Source: Saccostrea cucullata
Lineage: Eukaryota
NCBI RefSeq assembly: GCF_032062105.1
Contig: NW_026937312.1
Location: 434,001-498,000 of the forward strand
Direction: 5' to 3'
Length of the DNA: 64,000 nt
The notes under the pieces are model-generated. The model was not told where the DNA came from. It searched no databases and saw only the letters and a program-made list of their open reading frames with translations. This document shows positions 1 to 28,060 of the stretch, one piece after another (the stretch's first letter is position 1; the number at the start of each line of letters is the position of its first letter). Both the position numbers and the translations under genes were made by a program.

Positions 1-471
1 GCCACAGTGACCTTTATCATTTCGGTGCTGTATATTCTAGTCATCAAAAGAATCAGATATCAATTCCATCAAAAGAAACATGAAATATTTCCAAATATTC
101 GCAGAAATGAAAAATTGACTCAGAACGCAAATACTTCCGAGGAGAAAATAAACCGGAAGTTGATAAGGACCACGGTGACATTACTTGCTGTGACTATTTT
201 ATTTGTTCTAACAATATTCCCACATACCGTGCTTTCTCTAATTGATTATTCTGTGAAGAACTTCTTCTGTCGGTTGTCTTTTGAAGAAGGTGTGGTCTTC
301 AATTTCGCTATCCATTTCTTTTTGCTGAATAATGTTTTAAACTGTGTTATCTATGGGTTTACTGACAAACAGTTCAAGAGGAGGATATTGCTGCTTTTTA
401 GGAGACAAGAGTTCAACTTGTCCGAATCAAGCGATGCAACTTCTAACAGAATAGAAGAAAAAGAGGTTTAG
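1..471 (+). CDS. Class A (rhodopsin-like) GPCR, 5'-truncated by the window edge (TM5 end, ICL3, TM6, TM7, helix 8, C-tail)
   Basis: Open frame from base 1 to TAG at 469-471. It shows a TM5 end (FIISVLYILVIKRI), a basic ICL3, TM6 (TTVTLLAVTILFVLTIFP), TM7 with an NPxxY-like NCVIY, and helix 8 (FTDKQFKRRILLLF). AATAAA at 762-767 is a plausible polyA signal. The subfamily cannot be assigned by eye. Confidence 0.88.
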   Translation, partial: ATVTFIISVLYILVIKRIRYQFHQKKHEIFPNIRRNEKLTQNANTSEEKINRKLIRTTVTLLAVTILFVLTIFPHTVLSLIDYSVKNFFCRLSFEEGVVFNFAIHFFLLNNVLNCVIYGFTDKQFKRRILLLFRRQEFNLSESSDATSNRIEEKEV

Positions 472-9728: not shown

Positions 9729-9999
9729 GAAATTGACCTGAATTGAATCTAAATCAGAGTTTAATTGTTTGGGAAATTCAAATTTTTAAAAGGATTTTTC
9801 AGTTTATTAAACACGTTCATGAAAACATGGGAGTAAATTTAGAGACTGCATTTATATCAGAATCTAGGCTTTTTTAAATAGCTAAACGTAATTCATATAT
9901 TAAGTGTATATTATACCGGTATTTAAAAATTATTATATCTAATTACATGAATGATATTATTATATGACTTGATGTTAATTGAAAAAAGAAGAAAACACA

Positions 10000-10565
10000 T
10001 GCTGGGACATTCAACTCGACATTTAAAAATACATGTATATCGAAGAACTTATTGTCAATTATTTCAAAATAGGGGTTTTCCCCATTCTTATGTCCACACG
10101 ATATATCCCAGTGAACATGAAGTAAAAGATGCCTCAGAGTCTGACACCTCTGTATCATATTTAGATATTTAGAAAAAGACGTTAGTGGTTATTTAACAAC
10201 AAAGCTTTATAATAAACGTGATGTCTTTAACTTTTCGTCACCTTACCTTACTTATGCAGCAATATACAATCAGCACCTGCATTCGGGGTTGATTCGATAC
10301 GCAAGAACATGCTCTACGTATGAACAATTTCTAAATCGAGGTAAGTTATTGACAAACAAGTCAATGAAATAAAAATTATTTGCCATTATTTACACGCCGA
10401 ATTGTCGACGGATTTTCCCGTTAATTCCCGATCATGATAAGTAGCACATGGCGGTTGTGACCGATTGGCAGGGGATGTTCACTCCTCCATAACACCTGAT
10501 CCCACCTCTGATGTTTTGGAGGTACGCGTTTGCTCTGCTCCTGATTTGTATTGTTTTATGAATCT
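10000..10565 (+). mobile_element. Degenerate Penelope-like retroelement fragment (RT C-terminal part plus 3' tail)
   Basis: Decayed RT peptides (HSYVHTIYPSEHEVKDASESDTSVSYLDI; LTTKLYNKRD; IRYARTCS), followed by the family tail GTGACCG...GGGGATG...ACTCCTCC...CACCTGATCCCACCTCTG. Confidence 0.75.
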
Positions 10566-13500
10566 TAATATCTTTCGTTGCATGTAATACAATATCAAAA
10601 AATTTAAATATTTTATTGAGTATTTTACGTTATTTCTTATCACAATAAATTGTAAAAAATAAGTATTTAAGTTTTTTGATAAAAATACAGAAGAAAAATG
10701 TGTATAACATTACATGAAGTACTTGATTACATCAGGTCAAAAACAGTGATGAGGTTATTCTGAGAAAAGGGAAAAAATAAGTTTTTCAATATTCACAAAA
10801 ATGGACTATATCGATGAAACTTTCTGCATCAACAGTTTTGTTTTATTCAAATTGGTTAAAAAAGAGGTCAAATCAATATTTTAAACTGGAGATATCTTAC
10901 TAGTGAATTTAGAAAAAAATAATAATAAAATGTAAATAGAAATATTTATCAGAAAATAAATCTTCTAATCATTACCAATATCTTTTAATAGAATATGAAC
11001 TGAAGGGTTATGCAAATGTTTAAGCCTTATCTTTCTCCCAAGAAATTTTGAGACGATAACTTTGCAAAGATTAAATACCTGTATCTTATACCTTAAAATA
11101 AACATTACACATCATATCTGGTCCTTTGGCCTGTCAGGTATAAGCAAGTAATTATTCTGCAAATTTAAAAAAGTACCGAAAATTATTTCTTTAGGTCAAA
11201 AACTGATCGACTTAACAATACCTTTCCTTAGTAAGCATTTTTAGTTTTTTTTCTCAGGATGGACATGTTATTGTGTAACAAATAAAATTATTCAGAGAAA
11301 ATAAATTCTATTTTGTCTTCCTTGCAAATTTGTTCCCCAATTTTGTAATAGCACAATTTTAGCACACAAATCCAAAAAAAAAAAAAATATGCTTGCGTGA
11401 GAAGAGAATAATATTTCCCTGTCTGTCCCAGAGGGCTAAAATGAAGACCAAATATTCATTGGGTGTATACTTGTTTATTTGACAAACTTGAGTTCAGAAG
11501 GCCAACTAATTTGTATCCTAGATGAAATATATTTTATCACCCCCTTCTCAAACGGAGTTATTGTGAAGATACCACGAGGTCATATCTGGGGTGGAGTTTA
11601 AATGAACTTATATGAAGTAAGCACGAAATCACAATCTTATTTCTTGCTGTACACATATATTTTTGTCCTTTTGATCTCGCAAGGGACTAGACAGCAACGG
11701 CTTTGTATTTTTTCTTCATTTTTTTAAAGATAAAAGCAATTGGCAATTTGTCCTGAAACATTAAAACATGATTTGTAATACTACCGGGTATATAGTTTGT
11801 GGGCAACTGTGGAGTCTATCAATAATTACGAGATACCAATTTTCCAGTGAATCTGTTTGCTGTTCTGTGTTGAAATATTTTCATGCTTTCTTGCTGATGC
11901 CACTCAAAGGTATGCAAAACAATCACGTGTCACGCACTCTAATGGCTCGTGAAATTGACAAGCTGTTAACATACATCGATACAAAATTTGGAGCTTGGTC
12001 AGAAATGATGTGCTAAAACGTGTAACTATGTATTGCTGACTTAAGTTTTTTTTACCAATGCAATTAAAGTACAAAGCACATATAAAGAGAAAAGAAATAT
12101 GATTACTAGTATATAGAAAAATAACGAAAATGTGACATGCATATATAGTTTTTCAATATTACTTTAAAACAACATTTCAATAGAGTTTTATTGTCGGAAA
12201 ATCAGTACTGCAATCAGTTATTGTGACTGTAATATGCACATTTCTGTTTAGTTTTGAGTAAAATGCTAATTGTTAGTAGATAAGCATTGGAAATATTTAA
12301 CCAAAATAATGCTATATGTGTATATGATTTAGTACTATTTTCACAATGTTAGATAAGTATTGTATAAAAATTTGAAAATTTATCACATGCATTTAAGTCT
12401 TAAAGGAAAAAAGTAATAGTATGTACCATTATGTCACAGGTGTATCAAATATATTATCATATGTCAAAACTTGATCCTTTTCCGAAAGATGTAAAGCAAA
12501 ATAGATAAAAAGAGAAGAAAAAGAAATCCTTATCGTATGAAAGACTTACGTATATCATTTCATAGATGGGCAGACAAAATAAAGGACTGTACATTTTTTG
12601 CATGTTTTGATATATATCTTTAACGAGTTTTTTTGTTCACATGAAGGTTTTATTTGTTAAAAAAGTTTTAGTCTATAAACAGAAAGATGATAAAAATCGG
12701 TGAAGTAAATGAAAAATGGAAAATTTATTATTCACTTATATAATAAAAGTAAGAAAAGGACATTTTTTCATCCTTAGAAAAACCAGTACATGTATTATAT
12801 AAGAAGTTAAGAAATATTAATAAAATTTGAAATAAGACAAAAAATAACAACGATTGAAAAAAGTGCATTTGTATAATGTTACCCAGATCAAAACTTTCGC
12901 TTTATTTTTTTTATCATTTAGAGTACATTTTCTTTTATAGATATATAAAATGATTTTCAGTAAAATCCATGAAATATTCTATTCACTCTGACTGAATGAC
13001 AGAACACCACATGCTAATACAAACGTGTCATGCATTGTCCACATCCGTGAAATCGAACGAGTCATTAACATGCATAGCGAGACGGGAAAGCCAACGACAA
13101 CATACCTAAGATTGCTGGGGTATGAATGTCAGCCCATAATTGAGTCATCAACATGTCTAAAACAGCCAGATATTGAAGAATATTTTGTCTAAATCATCGA
13201 TCATTGGAGAAAATAATCATTTCATTACAACTATTATGAGTTAAAAAAGATTTATTTACTAACAAATGCCCTGTACATAACTTATTTTTCATTTTTAAAT
13301 GTAATTGAGTATCTCTTTGTTTATCTATATTTAACAGATTTATCAGTGGTAACATGATTCTTTTTTCTTATGTCTTCCTCATGTGCTTTGCAATACATTC
13401 GCTGAAAAGTTTTTCTTGAGACTTAATTTGCATAAAATTGCATAAGCTTTATTTTTAGCTGAAGAAAAACGTTTTAACTGACTGTCAGAATTATCATCTA

Positions 13501-14399
13501 TTCTTTTAATTTAAATTAATTAACTTCTGACGCAAGAGTTAATTTTGCTTTAACTGATATAGATAGTAAGATAATAAAACAATAAAAAGGCAATACTTTC
13601 GTAAAACAATCTGTACATTTGTTATACATGTATAATATTTAATTTTTCCTTATTTTGAACCACGTATATCGTTGCCATATAATTTTATTTTCATATGGTA
13701 CTTGATTAGAAATTTCATTTGAAAAACCTCAGAAAAAAATGTTTTAAAAGGATTATAATTTTCACTCGAATTCTCATAGGACAATCTAAAGAAACTTTCA
13801 AATGATGACAACATAAACATTCACCCGCATATCATTTTCCTAGGCGCTCTTAAGCATATTGAAAATCTGTACCCTGATATACAAATTATTTCAAATATGA
13901 TGATAAAATTATAATTCTATATAAAATATTGGCAACCCGCCACAAAGAAATATGGGACGCATAACATTTCTTTTAACGTGAACATTTTTTGTTATCACTG
14001 AAACTATTAAAATTTGTTTAAAGTTTCGGTTTTTGAAATAAATCATATTATTATCATAATATTTTTAGAATTCTCAGTAAAAATATGCTTTTTATCCTAC
14101 AACATATGTAAATGTGATTCTTACCTGATATAGCCTTACTTTTTATTTCTGCGAAAAATGAACAAAAGCAAAAATCGAGTGCTCCTCTGATATAAGAATT
14201 GCAAAACAAGTGCATTTTTGCTACATCATAATTTACTTTTTATATGAAAGCAACATGTTTTAAGTTGTCATTTGGCTTCTCACCAAACTGTACAGCTTTT
14301 CATATTAAATACTACTCCTTTTTCTATATTATCACTTCATCAAATTAAAAAAAATATTTTAATACTTTTTATACCATCTTAAATTTTTATATTAAATTT

Positions 14400-14553
14400 G
14401 ACTACAGAATTGATCAATACATTAGGCCCACGGTGGGTGTGACCGGTTGAAAGGAGATGCTCCCTCCTCCAATGTACCTGATCCTGCCTCTTGATTTGTA
14501 TTGCGTGTAATTTTTGTGAAACAATCACTGTTCGTTGACTTTTTCATTTTTAT
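14400..14553 (+). mobile_element. Penelope-like 3' tail fragment
   Basis: GGTGTGACCGGTTGAAAGGAGATGCTCCCTCCTCCAATGTACCTGATCC matches the tail at 10450-10510. Confidence 0.65.
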
Positions 14554-17500
14554 ATGAAGAACTTAAAATTTTAAGTTTTTATTTAATTAAAATATCAATA
14601 AAAACCCATCTTAGTGTGAATTGTTTTAATCCTTTGAAGAATGATGGTGACATGTATGAATGCTCTAATTTATCTATTGCCATTGCAATCAAGCGCGTGA
14701 AATAAACACTTGAAATGGAAAAGATTCATTTCAGAGAAGTTTTAAAAGGAGAACAAATGACTAAAATTGCTTCAAGACTATACAGTATAGTTTGATATTA
14801 ATCCTCCTATAACAAATGAACTGGACAGATGATATACACTGTCCCTAAACACCTGACTCAGCGATAGATATAATTTATCTGAGTAACGTAAATAGCAAAC
14901 AACCCAAAGGAGACATATAGACAAGGTAATTAATAATGGTGAAATGAAAGGAATTTTGGCTACAGATCAAAACATTAAGAAATTTCAGAATACCGGGACG
15001 AGGGTCAAGTATACTTACTTACGTAAATATATATAAATCTATATCAACTTACTTGTCAGTGGATGGGTATCTTTATATAAGAAAAGAAAGTAAAGAATGT
15101 GTCATCATTATTTAGATAAAAAAGTATTTAAAAGATTAGGTTTATCCTTTCATACGAAATATCAGAAACTTGAATAGAATTTGAAGTGTTTTAGATAAGA
15201 AAGATATCTTTTACTTTAAAAAATCTGTTGAAAATTATTGTTTTCCTGGCGAATGCATCATTATGAAAATAACACGATTTTGAACATCTGTGAAGTAACA
15301 TTTGAAATTTCCTAAATGATTTAAAATTGGTAGATAAGGCATACCAAAATCTATATGAGATAGTTTGGAAATAATCAATTGAAAAGAAAATAAATCAGAG
15401 AGCATACATGTTTCACAAAGTGTAATTTTTGCTGGTTAATTTAAAGAACAATCTTGAAATGCATTTTCACTTAATCTCAATCTTATATTATTTGAAAGCG
15501 ATAATTGCAGTTAAAAATAATTTTGCAACTTAAAGAAAAAAAATCATATTCGGTTTTTGCCACAACAAAATAGGAGAGAAAGGTTTTCATTTAAATACAA
15601 TATAGCACCCACACAATAACTTGCAATTTAAACGTTGTTATGTAGGCAGTGTTGTATTTAATATGAAAAATTCAATTTAAAAAAAGCATTGACATTTTGA
15701 ATTGTGAAAAACAATACAATTTAAGTCGTTTATGACTTTCCGACAAGATGCCAATATTTTATATGTAATTTCCAATCTTGTAAATTAATTTTTTTAATTT
15801 TGACATGTGGTATTTGCACTCTCACTTTCTATATATATACGTAAGGCAAAATGATTCATTTAATAAATCATTGAGACACAAATGAATGTGAGATAAATGT
15901 ATTTGTTTAATTTGATCATTTAGAATTCTGTAATTTAAGGAAATATTTAACATGCAATATGTTTTTTTCTGTTGTGTTTTATATTCACTGATGCCATTTT
16001 AAAGAATTGCCACTAAACTAACTGAAAAAATATTTTAAAGTTTTGTACATTGTTAATTTTCCAATGCATAAAGTTTTATATATGCTATTCAGTATATACA
16101 TTAAGTCTAGTACAATTTTCATTTCAAGACAAAGTTCTATTTGACATCTGAAAGTCAAGTAAATGATACCGTAGCATCTTCTTAATTTAATTTAAATAAT
16201 TTTGGAAGACATCTTTTGTATATAAACATTACTGCAAACATAGGAAATATAAAATAAATCAGTGGCTGTTAAAGGAGTATTTTTGACGTAAACATTGTTT
16301 TCCACATCGCTACTTTTACATTTATTTGTTTGAAAGAAATCTATAATCTATTTAAAGGCACAACGTTTGAATGTTTCACAGTCAGCAGCTGACTCACACG
16401 CTTATAATGGCTGTATTATTTACGGTATTGTTTACAATCTAAATATATTCCACCTGTTTTTGTAATCAATCTTTTTGTAATGGACTAATTTTCACTCAAT
16501 TTCCTCTGATATTTTATCCACCCTCAACATCTCTCCTTTGAAGAATTCTGACATTCTTTTAAATTTTGCAACACCATTGCATTTTATAATTGTATTTCAT
16601 TATTTATCTAAAAGGTTAAAATCAACCATAAATTAATTTATTGCTAGCCTATAGTTTCTAAATAAGTTAAAAATCTATACTTTATTTGAATTTCTTTTAT
16701 TGACAACACATTGGCATTAAGTGAATATAAAATAACATCTTCTCAGTAGTTTTTGGTGAACTATAATCGTAAATCAGTTGTTTGTTTTGTGGCTTTTCTT
16801 TAGCTTTTCCATCTGTTCAATGTTTTAATGTCTTTGATGCTATCTCTTCAATCATTTTCATTTGGAGGTCAGATAAGGAGTTTTTTTAACTTCTGAGAGA
16901 GGTTTTAAATAAAATCTGATATGGTTTTTACTGATATTAATATTTCAGGAGTCTTAAAAATCAACAACAGAATACAAATGCATTACGAATTCCTCATTAA
17001 TCAGATCCCTCCCATTCTTCCTATTTTTATAACCCTGTAAAAAAAAAAAGCATTGCCTCATGAAATTAAATTATATATTTTTTTTGTTTCATCAACGTCA
17101 GAAGGAATAGTGATCTAAATAAAAATTAAATATTTATTTATTTTCCGCGACATGTGCATTGTTCAGAAGGGATTTTTTTTATGATACCAATGGGATTTGA
17201 TTTGTAAAAAAGTCAGTTTTCTTTGTCCTCAGCTGACATCATCAATAAAATTCCATGCTCGACTCAAATAAGGGCAGCTCGTGTGAGGGTAATTTGAAGA
17301 GTTATCAAACAACACCAAGTGCAGGTAGGGCAAAGTTATGTCTACATGTAAGTCTTCTTAATTTTGCATCAACTTTTAACGATTAAATTTGATCAGTTTT
17401 TACTATTGATATTTGTTTAAATCTATGTACAGATATGATATGATAAATAAGTATATCCCTATAAATCTTTGTCAAATTAAGTGTACGTAGAAGTTATCTC

Positions 17501-23585: not shown

Positions 23586-24098
23586 TATAGTTTAGTTGTT
23601 TTTTTGCCGTAAATGTTTTTCACGTGTGACCTGTCAAACAGATATGTCTTAATCCCTGGTATATTTAAATTCTACAATGCAACATATTGCAATTGAATAT
23701 TGATAATTGATAAACGCAAACGAGAAATCTTAATTTTAACTTAAACGCTTCATTGAGAGAAGTTTTTTAGAAGAATTAATTTTTTTTATTTTAAAATCAA
23801 TTCTTTGTATGAATAGATTATAATAAAAATGCTGTACTTGTTTGTAATCACTATCACTCTATAGTAAAACATCGGAAAATGAAACAGAAATTGGACATGT
23901 ATAATGATTAATATTTTCCAATTTTCAAGTATGTAATACATTTACATGTACTGAGTATATACACTTTCTTCAATGGTTTGATGAAAAATGTATTTAATCA
24001 TTGATTTCACAGTTTGATGTGTATTAAAGAAAGACATTTGTTTCATTCAATATATTTGTACTAGATTCTTAAAATTGACAAAAATATGGGTTTGTGTA

Positions 24099-24242
24099 TG
24101 TCACGGATTATCCGCGGGTTTATGTAACGTACGTTAACGTTATTGTTACGTCACAATACTGTACGTTATGTTTCTATAGTTAATAACAGAGTCAAAATAA
24201 ACCACTATACGATCAAGACGCATTTCTATTCTTTCCACAACA
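24099..24242 (+). repeat. 5' LTR (144 bp)
   Basis: TGTCACGG...CCACAACA, identical on manual comparison to 26740-26883; contains AATAAA. Confidence 0.96.
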
Positions 24243-24246
24243 ATTT

Positions 24247-24257
24247 TGGTGCCGTGA
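24247..24257 (+). other. Primer-binding site complementary to the tRNA-His 3' end
   Basis: TGGTGCCGTGA begins after a 4-nt gap following the LTR. It is the reverse complement of ...TCACGGCA-CCA, the 3' end of metazoan tRNA-His(GUG). Confidence 0.8.
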
Positions 24258-24285
24258 TCGACGGAATGTCTACATAATACGTAAA

Positions 24286-26532
24286 ATGGAAGGAAGACTG
24301 AAAGCCATACGGGCCGGTAACAGATCAGCGGTGACGAAACTTTTCGGACGATTTTTGGACTTGAAAGAAAATACAACCAGTGAAGTAACGGAGGAAATCT
24401 AAGTAATTAGGAAATCTCTAACACAAAAAAGACAAACTCTACAAGAACTAAATGAACGCATATTAGACGCATTATCTGAAGAGGACATAGAAGAAGAAAT
24501 CACAAACACAGATGAGTATATGTACGAATTAGACTGCAAAATTAAGAAAACAGAAAAATTTACAGAAAAGGTTTCATGTAAAACGTTGAACGCCAGTGCT
24601 GAGTGTTTTGTACCCGCCTTAGAAATTCATGATAGTAACGTAAACACTTCAGCTGCAATTCACTCAAGTGAAACGGCTTGTGAGAATATTTTAAACAATT
24701 TTCCTGCCACTGATCTCGATGAACAAAGTACCCAGGATTGGCAGAAAAATGTTTTATCATTACCATCCAACCAGGCCACAAATAATCATCGACTACCGAA
24801 ACTGAATCTTCCACATTTTGACGGGGATATACTACAATGGAATACATTTTGGGATTCATACGAATCAACAATTCACCGCAACCAAACTTTAACACCAATT
24901 CAAAAGTTTTCGTATCTCAAGGCTCAATTACAGGACGCAGCAGCACAAACCATTGCAGGATTTACTCTCACAAACGCAAATTATGAAACCGCCATAGACC
25001 TGCTCAAGGAACGGTTTGGTCAACCCCAGAAAATTATTAATGCTCACATGAGAGCACTTATGGAACTGCAAGCCCCGAGAAACGACGCCATCAGTTTAAG
25101 AAATTATGGAGACTGCTTGGAATCTCATGTCAGGAGTTTAGAGTGTCTAGGACAAAAACAAGAGATGTACGGAGCTTTACTTATTCCAGTCATAATCAAC
25201 AAACTACCAGCTGAAATCAGGAAAAACATTGCACGTGAGTACGATGGTGACAACATTTCGCTACTCAATCTTCATAAAGCTATCAGCAAAGAAGTCAAAA
25301 TCCTTGAATCAGGCCAGATTGAAAACAGCGATGGATTCCACGCAACAGCAATGTTTCTTACCGGAGCCTCAAAGAAACAACGCCATGTTCATAATGGACA
25401 CAACCAGAAAACAAAAGAGTCAACTCCTTATGTCGAAACAACAGAGATAAAGAGCCGCCCATGCATTTATTGTTGCACAGAGAATCACTTTCCAGGGGAT
25501 TGTAAAAAAGTTACAGAAGTAAGTGCAAGATTCGACATCTTAAAACGTAAGAAATTATGTTTCAACTGCTTAGGAAACCACCGTGCCGCAGATTGTAAAT
25601 CCCGCAACAGATGTAAAAAGTGCCAGAAGAAACACCACACAAGTATATGCGACATGAAACTAACGAGGGACAGAGACGAGCCCACCAAATCAACAATTGT
25701 CAACATTGTAGGAACGAGCAAACAAAAACCCACAGAAATAAACGTTGAACAACGACATAAAAGTGTTTTATGGAAATCAGCTTCCACTCCGATGAGTCGG
25801 ACTGTGGACTCCATTCAAGAAAGTAGCAAGCTGACTAACGAGATACAGCAACTTAAGTCAGAGCTGAAGACTAAGACAGAAAGGATGAATACGTTGGAAC
25901 AAGAAAATGCTATTATGCTAGAGAGATTGTTACAATTCGACCAACAAAGAAATTTTCAGACTCGTGTGGAGAATGGGATGAAGGATATGATGGAACATAT
26001 AAATAAACTTGCGCACGAAAACGGACGTCTGCATAACGAGGTTCAGGAATTAAAGGACCAAGTTGTTAATATCAAAACCTACAGCACTCACTTGGAGCAT
26101 TTTAATGCTAAAAACAGCAGTCTTCAGTCACGATATGATTACGCTCTAAGGCAAATAAGTGATCTAAATATCAAAGTACAGACACTTGAAAATCAGCTAC
26201 AAACCTCACAGGGCCCCGTGGAAAGAAGGGAGAAAGATTACACGTTCGCCGTAAGGATCCGTGATGACACACGAAGGGAAGAAACTCAGATGACAGAAAA
26301 ACGTACAGAGGCTGAGGAGAAGGAAAAAGAAAAATCACAGAAAAAGAATCTCAGGGACATGGCAGAGATAATAAACAAAATGCCAATCTACGGACTCGAA
26401 ACATGGAACTGGAGAAATCTAACACAGAACTACGTCACAAACACTCCGAGGAATTCATACAGAGGAGAGACGGATTCGTTAGAGCTGCCACTTTACGGAC
26501 CAAAAATGGACTTACCAACAGACCAATTGTGA
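24286..26532 (+). pseudogene. gag: BEL/Pao Gag (DUF1759-type capsid, three Zn knuckles) fused to a long coiled-coil; one in-frame TAA at codon 39; 670-aa open frame from 24520
   Basis: ATG 24286 (MEGRLKAIRAGNRSAVTKL) is in frame with the 24520-26532 ORF except for TAA at 24400-24402. Capsid motif RLPKLNLPHFDGDILQWNTFWDSY...KFSYLK...LLKERFG. Knuckles CIYCCTENHFPGDC, CFNCLGNHRAADC, CKKCQKKHHTSIC. Heptad-rich region at about 25810-26212. Confidence 0.88.
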
Positions 26533-26636
26533 AACTATATCCAATCGAAGTGAATGAGAACGAACTTAAAATACTATCTTCTGATCGAGTGTCAAAAACA
26601 AAAGCCAAAGAAAGAATCCGTGAATGGACCTCTTAA
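26448..26636 (+). pseudogene. Remnant of the BEL/Pao integrase C-terminal (DUF5641-like) tail, out of frame with gag
   Basis: EEFIQRRDGFVRAATLRTKNGLTNRPIVKLYPIEV...KAKERIREWTS matches the G.DG.VR.A...T..G...RPI.KL.P.E motif that ends BEL/Pao polyproteins. Confidence 0.8.
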
Positions 26637-26739
26637 TTGAGTGATTATGAACTTGTATTTATTTTGAATTTCAATGAACTGTTAATTTGATTTGAACTTT
26701 CTTAATATTCTAGTATAATATTCATTTCGGTGCCCGGAG

Positions 26740-26883
26740 TGTCACGGATTATCCGCGGGTTTATGTAACGTACGTTAACGTTATTGTTACGTCACAATAC
26801 TGTACGTTATGTTTCTATAGTTAATAACAGAGTCAAAATAAACCACTATACGATCAAGACGCATTTCTATTCTTTCCACAACA
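26740..26883 (+). repeat. 3' LTR (144 bp)
   Basis: Identical to the 5' LTR; preceded by CGGTGCCCGGAG (PPT position) and followed by TSD GTGTA. Confidence 0.96.
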
Positions 26884-27858
26884 GTGTAAAAAATCATACT
26901 TTCACATTTGACATCACGCTCATCTATTTTTATTCATTTCAATATTTAAAATCTGTCTAATTAAAAAAATCTATTATTAGAAATAAAATTGCAACTTTCT
27001 CATGAAACAGAGAGCGGTTCGCCTTTGTCCTTTATATATTTAGTATTTTTTGTGAAATGTTTTTATGGGGAAAACTGGTGCCTAAGAAAAATTCATACAA
27101 ATAGAAAATTTAACAAAGAAAAGATGAATCAGTTACTGAACACGAATGAGCACAAATAAAACTAAAATGAAATAATTTTGCTTTGTAGGCGAGCATCCAA
27201 TTTTTCCAAAAATCATTTTAAATCTTCAAAATCTTCATAAAATAATCTGTTTCTTTGAACAGTAGTGTTAAATGCTTGAAATATAGAAGCCAATTGAAAA
27301 GATGCCACTGATAAAACAATTCAAACACCTTCCTAAAACAGAGCTTTTTACAGGAAATGTACAGATCAATTTAAAGCCTGGAGTATAATTCTATTAAGTT
27401 TATCGTATCTGGACATGAAAGTCCCCTCCGTGTCGAAGTTCAGCAGATGAGCAGGGGATTTTATGTGTGTTTAATCCCCACAAACGGCCAAGGTAATTTC
27501 AAGCAAATGTTATACATTATACACCTTTACCCCAGTCTTTCAAGAAGATACAATATTTAACCAATGCTCAAGAACAGCGCATTAACGGAGTTATTTGCAT
27601 AAATCTAGTAATCCTTCTCAATTACATGCATTAGATTGGAAAATTAAATAAAATACAACAGATGCTCTAACAAAGAAAACTTGAATTCTCATTTCAGATG
27701 ACAATTTTTATTCAATGGTTTTGGCTTTTGTGATACAGCTTTAGCAAGAAATCAACGCAAAGAAAAAACAAATTCTCTATGTTATTAATGAGTAATGACG
27801 TTTAATATAACAAAGTAAGAATGCAAGATGAATATGCAAAGTATCTACTTTATTTGTA

Positions 27859-28060
27859 TACTGTAAAATCACATATTTCTAAGGGTCAAATTTTCGTGGT
27901 TTGAATAGAAAACTCTTGGTTCGTGGGATCGATTTGAATTCGTGGATGAAGAATTGTTGAGTAGTTATGTATGTAAGATTTTACATTTCTTAGTGGGCAT
28001 GAATTCATGGGTCTCTTCATATCTCGAAAACAACGAAAATTAAACAACCACGAAATTCTG
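27859..28060. mobile_element. Degenerate Tc1/mariner-type MITE
   Basis: Begins TA-CTGTA. Repeated TTCGTGG motifs on the left face CCACGAA/CAACGAA on the right. The right terminus is decayed. Confidence 0.45.

What the first reader, a model, noticed from the sequence alone, without database searches (positions are those of the whole stretch)
24099..26883. Young, compact BEL/Pao element in which the whole pol is replaced in frame by a long coiled-coil
Seen: identical LTRs, perfect TSD and intact PBS indicate recent mobilisation. After the three Zn knuckles the ORF reads KSVLWKSASTPM, which resembles the VLLKTA lead-in to the BEL protease. It then switches without a stop to about 135 aa of heptad-rich sequence (about 25810-26212) and a charged tail. 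No protease, RT, RNase H or integrase catalytic motifs are present; only the extreme integrase tail remains. Known: autonomous BEL/Pao elements are much longer and encode a single gag-pol. Inference: this is not a simple deletion derivative but a non-autonomous lineage encoding its own modified Gag and borrowing Pol in trans. The coiled-coil could drive co-assembly with, or interference with, helper capsids. This is the best candidate for an undescribed system in the window.
Basis: partly seen in the sequence, partly recalled or inferred. Interest (0 to 1): 0.78.

Follow-up and report, generated by a model that had tools for sequence, protein, structure and literature searches.

The report
Oyster retrotransposon carrying captured host gene
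This is a small oyster BEL/Pao retrotransposon whose enzyme genes were replaced by a spliced piece of the host gene CCDC150, fused in frame to its Gag; it is copied with the help of a complete sister element, which is a tidy new example of a known process.

Summary
There are two identical 144-nt LTRs, a 5-bp target-site duplication (GTGTA), a primer-binding site, a BEL/Pao Gag (DUF1759) with three CCHC knuckles, a helical segment read without a stop, and an integrase tail.

- This copy has an in-frame TAA 38 codons into Gag.
- The last 54 codons of the ORF are out of frame.
- The integrase tail lies in another frame.

The "coiled-coil" is not a retroelement invention. It is an intron-less cDNA fragment of the host gene CCDC150: exons 8-10, the end of exon 12 and the start of exon 13. 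A tree places its source in the Saccostrea lineage.

A complete 5.8-kb BEL/Pao element in Saccostrea cucullata has the same LTRs, primer-binding site and 3' end. In the window element about 650 nt of host cDNA replace 3.7 kb of that element's protease-RT-integrase. Both junctions show microhomology.

At least three other S. cucullata loci carry the same junctions with different target-site duplications. The family was therefore mobilised after the capture, and it has exchanged Gag/LTR sequence with the complete element.

Gag is under purifying selection. The captured part is relaxed, although its frame has stayed open.

This is LTR-mediated retroposition (host-gene transduction), already described in animals, including Pao elements. 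It is a new member of a known kind.

The parts
24094..24098 (+). Target-site duplication GTGTA, left copy
   Evidence: Read. The same 5 nt occur at 26884-26888.
24099..24242 (+). 5' LTR, 144 nt, TG...CA ends
   Evidence: 100% identical to 26740-26883. 97-99% identical to the LTRs of the S. cucullata copies and of the autonomous element.
24247..24264 (+). Primer-binding site region (TGGTGCCGTGA...)
   Evidence: Identical in the window, L001 and the autonomous element L006. The tRNA partner was not tested; no tRNA gene is present in the window or the loci.
24286..25791 (+). Gag coding region: N-terminal part, DUF1759 core (24817-25233), three CCHC knuckles (25462-25650), and a remnant of the protease lead-in (25759-25791)
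   Evidence: Pfam DUF1759 E 1.8e-38. Knuckles. 94.8% nt identity to the autonomous element up to 25798. Omega among copies is 0.19-0.3, P about 1e-12.
24400..24402 (+). In-frame TAA that breaks Gag in this copy only
   Evidence: Same frame as ATG 24286 and as the long ORF. The other four copies have a sense codon here.
25792..25798 (+). 5' capture junction: 7-nt microhomology (helper GTGAGTC, first bases of host exon 8 GTAAGTC)
   Evidence: Three-way alignment. Helper homology ends at 25798. Host homology starts at the first base of exon 8.
25792..26450 (+). Captured, intron-less CCDC150 cDNA: exon 8 (25792-25950), exon 9 (25951-26142), exon 10 (26143 to about 26331), end of exon 12 (to 26367), first 83 nt of exon 13 (26368-26450)
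   Evidence: Protein hits to oyster CCDC150, 68% identity to S. cucullata. Five separate blocks match the host gene locus L002, with the introns absent.
26320..26334 (+). Internal deletion junction between two AAAGAAAAAG repeats; it removes host exon 11 and the first ~105 nt of exon 12
   Evidence: Overlapping blastn blocks and direct reading.
26368..26376 (+). 1-nt deletion relative to the host just after the exon 12/13 junction; it shifts the ORF out of the CCDC150 frame
   Evidence: Host and element read side by side. The host frame continues as KQNANL...HKHSE in the +1 frame.
26368..26532 (+). Frameshifted 54-codon tail of the long ORF, with stop at 26530-26532
   Evidence: Predicted disordered, pLDDT about 30. 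The tail is re-shifted in copies L003 and L005.
26448..26450 (+). 3' capture junction: GAG/GGAG microhomology, in the middle of host exon 13
   Evidence: Three-way alignment. Helper homology resumes at 26448.
26451..26636 (+). Last ~61 codons of integrase (DUF5641 end) with the pol stop codon; in frame with host exon 13 but not with the long ORF
   Evidence: Pfam DUF5641 E 7.5e-4. 97.3% nt identity to L006 15209-15645.
26724..26739 (+). Sequence just upstream of the 3' LTR (plus-strand primer region)
   Evidence: Identical in the window, L001 and the autonomous element.
26740..26883 (+). 3' LTR
26884..26888 (+). Target-site duplication GTGTA, right copy

Best explanation
The element is one copy of a non-autonomous BEL/Pao LTR retrotransposon family of Saccostrea oysters.

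Origin: during reverse transcription of an autonomous 5.8-kb BEL/Pao element, the reverse transcriptase switched template onto a spliced CCDC150 mRNA and back again. About 3.7 kb (protease, RT, RNase H, integrase) was replaced by about 650 nt of host cDNA. The LTRs, primer-binding site, 3' priming region and a complete Gag were kept.

Product: the result was a Gag-CCDC150 fusion ORF. A later 1-nt deletion cut its connection to the integrase tail.

Propagation: because all cis signals match those of the autonomous partner, the RNA is packaged, reverse-transcribed and integrated by the partner's enzymes in trans. This produced several insertions with 5-bp target-site duplications. It also allowed repeated recombination with the partner in the LTR-Gag part.

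Role of the captured segment: it is best read as a tolerated passenger. It forms a helical C-terminal extension of Gag under relaxed constraint, and mainly its open frame has been kept. The window copy cannot make the full protein because of the TAA at 24400.

Shown: host origin, spliced structure, junctions, the partner element, multiple insertions, and mosaic Gag.
Inferred: template switching as the mechanism, trans-mobilisation, and passenger status.
For: - Host origin: the ORF's C-terminal part matches oyster CCDC150 at E 5e-60, 68% identity.
- Spliced structure: five blocks collinear with exons of the S. cucullata gene, with introns absent and the exon 8|9, 9|10 and 12|13 junctions preserved.
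- Source lineage: captured copies group with Saccostrea hosts against Crassostrea+Ostrea (support 100/99; other placements rejected, p-AU 0.0075).
- Autonomous partner: L006 9813-15645 carries DUF1759, DUF1758, RVT_1, Peptidase_A17, integrase and DUF5641. It is collinear with the window element on both sides of the insert at 94.8% and 97.3% identity. Its primer-binding site and 3' flank are identical.
- Junction microhomologies.
- Mobilisation after capture: the same junctions occur in L001 (duplication GTAGG), L003/L004 (GCCAT) and L005, versus GTGTA in the window.
- Exchange with the partner: a single clade of the non-autonomous copies in LTR-Gag is rejected (p-AU 0.02; first half 0.006).
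- Selection: Gag omega 0.19-0.3; captured part 0.5-0.75, not significant.
- Precedent: PMC5131818.
Against: - The passenger reading is not secure. Placing the 130 host-to-captured changes at random gives about 7 stop codons, and none of 5000 trials had zero. Third positions differ 41% against 16% for first and second positions. All indels inside Gag-CC are multiples of three. All three observations fit selection on the translated product.
- These tests are weakened because copies were found through annotated ORFs, and because part of the path belongs to the constrained host gene.
- The 5' junction sits exactly at a host exon start and at one of only two GTRAGT motifs in the partner. A splice-mediated fusion is therefore not excluded.
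- The only complete partner copy examined has an in-frame stop between protease and RT. No intact helper was shown.
- Trans-mobilisation itself was not observed.
Confidence: 0.8

Rival explanations
1. The captured coiled-coil has become a working part of a modified Gag. It would be selected because it helps the fusion protein co-assemble with, or interfere with, the autonomous element's capsids.
For: - The frame stays open through about 190 captured codons despite 24% nt divergence from the source, while random placement of the same changes gives about 7 stops.
- Third positions differ 41% against 16% for first and second positions. Path omega is 0.15-0.30.
- In-frame indels only.
- The segment is predicted as long helices.
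- The stem of the captured clade is long (0.38 aa changes per site) against a crown of about 0.05, so the fusion persisted for a long time.
Against: - Among four independent copies there are 29 non-synonymous and 14 synonymous changes. That gives omega 0.73-0.79 at the observed transition bias, P 0.2-0.3.
- Amino-acid divergence from the host is at least 6 times that of the host lineage.
- A frameshift already destroyed the 3' part of the insert. The resulting tail is disordered and differs between copies.
- Copies were found through annotated ORFs, which biases the frame and indel tests.
- Keeping a long ORF could serve RNA stability rather than protein function.
Confidence: 0.25
2. The 5' junction was made by RNA splicing rather than template switching. 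An autonomous element sitting upstream of CCDC150 exon 8 in the same orientation was read through. A cryptic donor at the start of its protease (G|GTGAGT) was spliced to the exon 8 acceptor. Only the 3' junction needed a template switch. This is the classical route of retroviral oncogene capture.
For: - The host part begins at the first base of exon 8.
- The partner has G|GTGAGT exactly at the junction. GTRAGT occurs only twice in its 5.8-kb sense strand.
Against: - Exon 8 itself starts with GTAAGTC, so the two sequences share 6 of 7 bases. Microhomology of this size is typical of template switches (median 6 bp in PMC5131818).
- Under the splice route that similarity would be a coincidence of about 0.2% or less. 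Under template switching only the exon-start position (a few per cent) is coincidental.
- No element insertion was seen in the host gene locus L002.
Confidence: 0.2
3. The locus is a host gene (a domesticated Gag fused to a coiled-coil), or an assembly chimera, rather than a mobile element.
For: NCBI annotates the S. cucullata copies as ordinary 'uncharacterized protein' genes.
Against: - Complete LTR pairs, a primer-binding site and a different 5-bp duplication at each locus.
- At least four loci besides the window, with unrelated flanks.
- The same structure appears in the window and in an independent assembly.
- This copy carries a premature stop.
Confidence: 0.02

Closest known systems
LTR-mediated retrocopies ('pseudo-LTR retrotransposons') of metazoans (Tan et al. 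2016, Genome Res, PMC5131818), including cases made by the Pao element BATUMI in Drosophila and BEL18_AG in mosquito
   Same: - Part of the internal ORFs is replaced by a partial, intron-less host mRNA copy.
- Short microsimilarity at both fusion points.
- The retrocopy is often in frame.
- The chimera can go through further rounds of retroposition as a non-autonomous element.
   Different: - Here the chimera is old (24% nt divergence from the source gene) and has become a multi-copy family with its Gag intact.
- It keeps exchanging sequence with its autonomous partner.
- The host is an oyster.
Maize Bs1 retroelement (Jin and Bennetzen 1994; Elrouby and Bureau 2001, 2010; as summarised in PMC13317346)
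   Same: A non-autonomous LTR element that transduced host gene fragments, which became part of a hybrid ORF within the element.
   Different: Bs1 is a plant element with pieces of three host genes. This one is BEL/Pao, in an animal, with one host gene contributing several exons.
Acutely transforming retroviruses with Gag-onc fusion proteins, such as Gag-Myc of MC29 or Gag-Abl of Abelson virus (from general knowledge, not tested here)
   Same: - Architecture LTR-(partial or complete) gag-host cDNA in frame-remnant of the 3' viral genes-LTR.
- Replication-defective and helper-dependent.
- Capture through chimeric RNA and non-homologous recombination during reverse transcription.
   Different: There is no sign that the captured piece has signalling or growth-promoting activity. 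The element is germ-line inherited and intragenomic, with no env.
Gag-only non-autonomous LTR retrotransposons such as barley BARE-2 (mentioned in PMC13317346; details from general knowledge)
   Same: They encode Gag but no Pol, share cis signals with an autonomous partner, and are mobilised in trans.
   Different: Those arose by mutation or deletion, without a captured host sequence fused to Gag.

Membership tests
BEL/Pao LTR retrotransposons (Belpaoviridae) | LTRs with TG...CA ends flanked by a short target-site duplication | tested here: met
   144-nt identical LTRs and a GTGTA duplication.
BEL/Pao LTR retrotransposons (Belpaoviridae) | BEL/Pao-type Gag (DUF1759) with CCHC knuckles | tested here: met
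   DUF1759 E 1.8e-38. Three knuckles.
BEL/Pao LTR retrotransposons (Belpaoviridae) | Pao-type protease, RT/RNase H and integrase encoded in the element | tested here: not met
   None in the window element. All are present in the collinear autonomous relative L006. The window element is therefore a derivative, not an autonomous member.
Non-autonomous LTR retrotransposon mobilised in trans | Shares LTRs, primer-binding site and 3' priming region with an autonomous element of the same genome | tested here: met
   L006: LTRs 97-98% identical; primer-binding site and 3' flank identical.
Non-autonomous LTR retrotransposon mobilised in trans | Several insertions of the defective form at different sites, each with its own target-site duplication | tested here: met
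   Window GTGTA, L001 GTAGG, L003/L004 GCCAT, L005 complex CAACT. Flanks are unrelated.
Non-autonomous LTR retrotransposon mobilised in trans | Demonstrated dependence on the partner's Pol | not testable with these tools
   Needs an experiment. The one complete partner copy seen has an in-frame stop at L006 12008-12010.
LTR-mediated retroposition / host-gene transduction | Internal segment derived from a host gene that exists elsewhere with introns, and is present in the element without them | tested here: met
   Five exon blocks of L002 are contiguous in the element. Introns of about 0.2-2.3 kb are absent.
LTR-mediated retroposition / host-gene transduction | The host segment replaces, rather than interrupts, internal retroelement sequence | tested here: met
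   L006 11517-15208 is missing and the cDNA takes its place.
LTR-mediated retroposition / host-gene transduction | Microsimilarity between element and mRNA at the fusion points | tested here: met
   5' junction: 6 of 7 nt (GTRAGTC). 3' junction: GAG/GGAG. A variant in L007 is joined at GATCGAGT.
Domesticated Gag-derived host gene | Single, LTR-less locus under purifying selection | tested here: not met
   Multi-copy, with full LTRs. The window copy has a premature stop.

The most novel reading that the evidence does not exclude
The Gag-CCDC150 fusion may be more than a passenger-carrying cripple. It could be a selected 'parasite of a parasite': the helical extension would let its Gag multimerise with, or poison, the autonomous element's particles. 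That would give the defective family a packaging advantage or give the host a brake on the helper. The long persistence of an open frame and the constant recombination with the helper would then be signs of an arms race between the two elements.
Probability: 0.15. Interest if true: 0.7.

Novelty: new member of a known kind. Interest (0 to 1): 0.35.

Why it matters
The locus is a clean, fully dissectable animal example of a retrotransposon capturing a spliced host gene fragment. The source gene, the autonomous partner, both junctions, a second junction variant and several daughter insertions are all in hand.

It shows three things:
- Such chimeras can outlive the capture event by a long time.
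- They can spread as a family.
- They can keep their Gag and LTRs current by recombining with the helper.

For annotation, it means the S. cucullata 'uncharacterized protein' genes LOC134281340, LOC134253748, LOC134239853 and LOC134237725 are copies of this element, not host genes.

It does not reveal a new kind of system.

Tried and rejected
- Search for an autonomous element or a second copy inside the window: there is none. Only two ORFs reach 150 aa, and the LTR motif occurs only twice.
- tRNA partner of the primer-binding site: no tRNA genes in the window or in seven loci. From memory, the first 11 nt look like the complement of a tRNA-His 3' end. That is a lead, not a test.
- Rfam scan of the window: nothing found.
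- Rooting the captured clade with the crinoid CCDC150: the branch is too long and gives no resolution. The tree was redone without it.
An earlier look-up of isoform X2 was not on record, so isoform X1 was used.
- Closer source gene: a search with the captured part alone found only one short 63% hit.
- Plain Nei-Gojobori dS against the host saturated in exon 8. It was recomputed with transition-weighted site counts.
- Joined host coding model: none was built or handed to any search tool. Host exons were compared one by one and only the counts were summed.
- The large representative-protein search and the structure-library search were not needed.
- No contig looked human.
Full report
**What is at the coordinates**

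- Window 24099-26883 is a 2,785-nt LTR element.
- The two LTRs (24099-24242, 26740-26883) are 144 nt and identical. They begin TG and end CA, and are flanked by GTGTA on both sides.
- The LTR start occurs nowhere else in the 64-kb window.
- After the 5' LTR comes ATTTTGGTGCCGTGATCGACGG, the primer-binding region.
- The coding frame starts at ATG 24286. It hits an in-frame TAA at 24400-24402, then stays open to the stop at 26530-26532. The ORF listing reports the 670-aa part from the first ATG, 24520.
- Pfam finds the BEL/Pao Gag domain DUF1759 (E 1.8e-38). There is no protease, RT, RNase H or integrase.
- In another frame (26403-26636) there is a weak match to DUF5641, the end of BEL/Pao integrase (E 7.5e-4, below the curated cut-off).
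- Three CCHC knuckles lie at 25462-25650.
It overlooked the premature stop and the frame difference of the integrase tail.

**What the coiled-coil is**

- A word search with ORF residues 415-670 returned oyster CCDC150 (coiled-coil domain-containing protein 150). Identity is 68% to Saccostrea cucullata, 63-64% to Crassostrea/Magallana and 59% to Ostrea.
- It also returned a 747-aa S. cucullata protein with DUF1759 that is 93% identical over the whole ORF.
- The S. cucullata CCDC150 gene (locus L002, 21 kb, about 19 exons) was fetched.
- The element matches it in five separate blocks, collinear with exons I number 8, 9, 10, 12 and 13. Host introns of roughly 0.2 to 2.3 kb are absent.
- Exons 8-10 are all phase 0 and are read in the Gag frame.
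- The 8|9, 9|10 and 12|13 junctions are those of the spliced mRNA.
- Exon 11 and the first ~105 nt of exon 12 are missing. The gap lies between two AAAGAAAAAG repeats.
- A 1-nt deletion relative to the host just after the 12|13 junction (about 26368-26376) throws the ORF out of the CCDC150 frame. The last 54 codons are therefore a frameshifted reading of exon 13 and the integrase tail.
- In the host frame, exon 13 runs straight into the integrase tail. The original fusion probably ended at the pol stop (26634-26636).
- AlphaFold2 gives a confident helical Gag core (pLDDT 85-90). It gives three long helices over the captured part (pLDDT 60-83) and a disordered shifted tail (pLDDT about 30).
Exons were handled one at a time.

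**The autonomous partner and the junctions**

- A search with the Gag part found S. cucullata proteins with Gag plus the BEL/Pao protease domain.
- Locus L006 holds a 5.8-kb element (9813-15645, duplication ATAAG). It carries DUF1759, DUF1758, RVT_1, Peptidase_A17, integrase and DUF5641.
- Its gag-pol frame is open for 1,781 codons except for one in-frame stop at L006 12008-12010.
- The window element equals L006 9813-11516 (94.8%), plus the cDNA, plus L006 15209-15645 (97.3%). So 3.7 kb of protease-RT-RNase H-integrase was replaced by about 650 nt.
- The primer-binding site and the 25 nt before the 3' LTR are identical.
- At the 5' junction the partner reads ...CCCCG GTGAGTC. Host exon 8 starts GTAAGTC directly after its acceptor AG. 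The element reads CCG ATGAGTC GGACTG.
- At the 3' junction the overlap is GAG/GGAG, in the middle of exon 13.
- I favour template switching at microhomology for both junctions, as in PMC5131818.
- The 5' junction coincides with an exon start and with one of only two GTRAGT motifs in the partner. That keeps a splice-mediated fusion alive as a rival.
- Locus L007, a rearranged chimera of partner and defective element, carries a longer piece of exon 13 joined to the integrase tail at GATCGAGT. At least two 3'-junction forms therefore exist, and the window's form may be secondary.

**A family, mobilised after capture**

- The cluster of the 747-aa protein has four S. cucullata members. Their loci were fetched.
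- All have the same 5' junction, the same exon deletion and the same frameshift.
- L001 has duplication GTAGG and one LTR difference.
- L003 and L004 are the same locus on two contigs (98.6% identical flanks, duplication GCCAT).
- L005 is a nested or inverted complex flanked by CAACT.
- Flanks are unrelated to the window.
- Copies are 95.4-96.8% identical to each other. The window copy is no more distant than the others. The window is therefore probably S. cucullata or a close relative.
- Only the window copy has the stop at 24400.

**Selection and history**

- Among four independent copies, Gag shows omega 0.19-0.3: 58 non-synonymous against 76 synonymous changes, P about 1e-12.
- The captured part shows 29 non-synonymous against 14 synonymous changes. 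That is omega 0.53 unweighted and 0.73-0.79 at the observed transition bias, P 0.2-0.3.
- Against the host gene, the captured exons 8-10 are 75.9% identical. Third positions differ 41%, first and second positions 16%. Path omega is 0.15 (plain count) to 0.27-0.30 (transition-weighted). G-to-A is the commonest change.
- Part of that path belongs to the constrained host gene.
- Placing the 130 changes at random on the host exons gives about 7 stops, and never zero in 5000 trials. All indels inside Gag-CC are multiples of three.
- The frame has therefore been kept open. However, copies were found through annotated ORFs and the finding itself was picked for its ORF, so these tests are biased.
- A protein tree puts the captured copies with the Saccostrea hosts (100/99; other placements rejected, p 0.0075). 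The stem is 0.38 changes per site against a crown of about 0.05. The capture is old relative to the spread of the present copies.
- In LTR-Gag, the two partner copies interleave with the defective copies. A single clade of the defective copies is rejected (p-AU 0.02; first half 0.006).
- Only the last ~80 nt before the junction are private to the defective family. They are 22% diverged from the partner.
- This mosaic fits repeated recombination between co-packaged RNAs. It also means that Gag's low omega may be borrowed from the partner.

**Verdict**

- The structure, origin and spread are settled. This is a helper-dependent BEL/Pao derivative carrying a transduced, spliced CCDC150 fragment fused to Gag.
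- That is a known process in plants (Bs1) and in animals, including Pao and BEL elements. It is a new member of a known kind.
- Whether the helical extension does anything remains open.

**Limits**

- No whole-genome DNA search of oyster assemblies was possible.
- The tRNA partner of the primer-binding site was not tested.
- No intact helper was shown.
- One experimental step was referred.

Noticed in passing
window 7-471 (+): A 154-aa ORF at the window's edge matches the C-terminal half of rhodopsin-family GPCRs (7tm_1, E 4.7e-7, 30.0 bits against a cut-off of 30.5). It is probably an exon of a host receptor gene.
   Followed up: partly
L003 3232-6167 and L004 1238-4184: The arrangement is LTR-internal-LTR-about 20 nt-LTR inside a single GCCAT duplication. 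The 20-nt spacer is the start of the primer-binding region fused to the end of the 3' priming region. The two regions share a TTTYGGTGCC motif.
   Followed up: partly
L007 9491-12903: A chimera of the autonomous element's 5' half (LTR, Gag, protease, part of RT), then the last 27 nt of an LTR plus 4 nt, then the 3' part of the captured CCDC150 piece. The exon 13 segment is longer here and the junction to the integrase tail differs (GATCGAGT). No matching target-site duplication is present.
   Followed up: partly
L005 1046-4650: A nested or inverted complex of element parts: inverted LTRs at both ends, a tandem 3' fragment sharing an LTR with a full copy, all flanked by CAACT. It may be a real rearrangement or an assembly problem.
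   Followed up: no
L002 11151-11167 (host CCDC150 intron 7 / exon 8 boundary): The acceptor AG is followed at once by GTAAGT, so the 3' splice site abuts a consensus 5' splice site. This layout resembles recursive splice sites.
   Followed up: no
L006 12008-12010: The autonomous partner's gag-pol frame has a single in-frame stop between protease and RT. NCBI annotates two genes there. Whether it is a mutation or a read-through signal is unknown.
   Followed up: partly
window 24001-28000: The element's sense strand is strongly A-rich (AT skew 0.22 against about 0 in the flanks). G-to-A is the commonest difference between the host exons and the captured copy (31 of 130).
   Followed up: partly
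window 59933-60193: A 135-nt unit is repeated 1.9 times at 98% identity and starts with a long T run.
   Followed up: no
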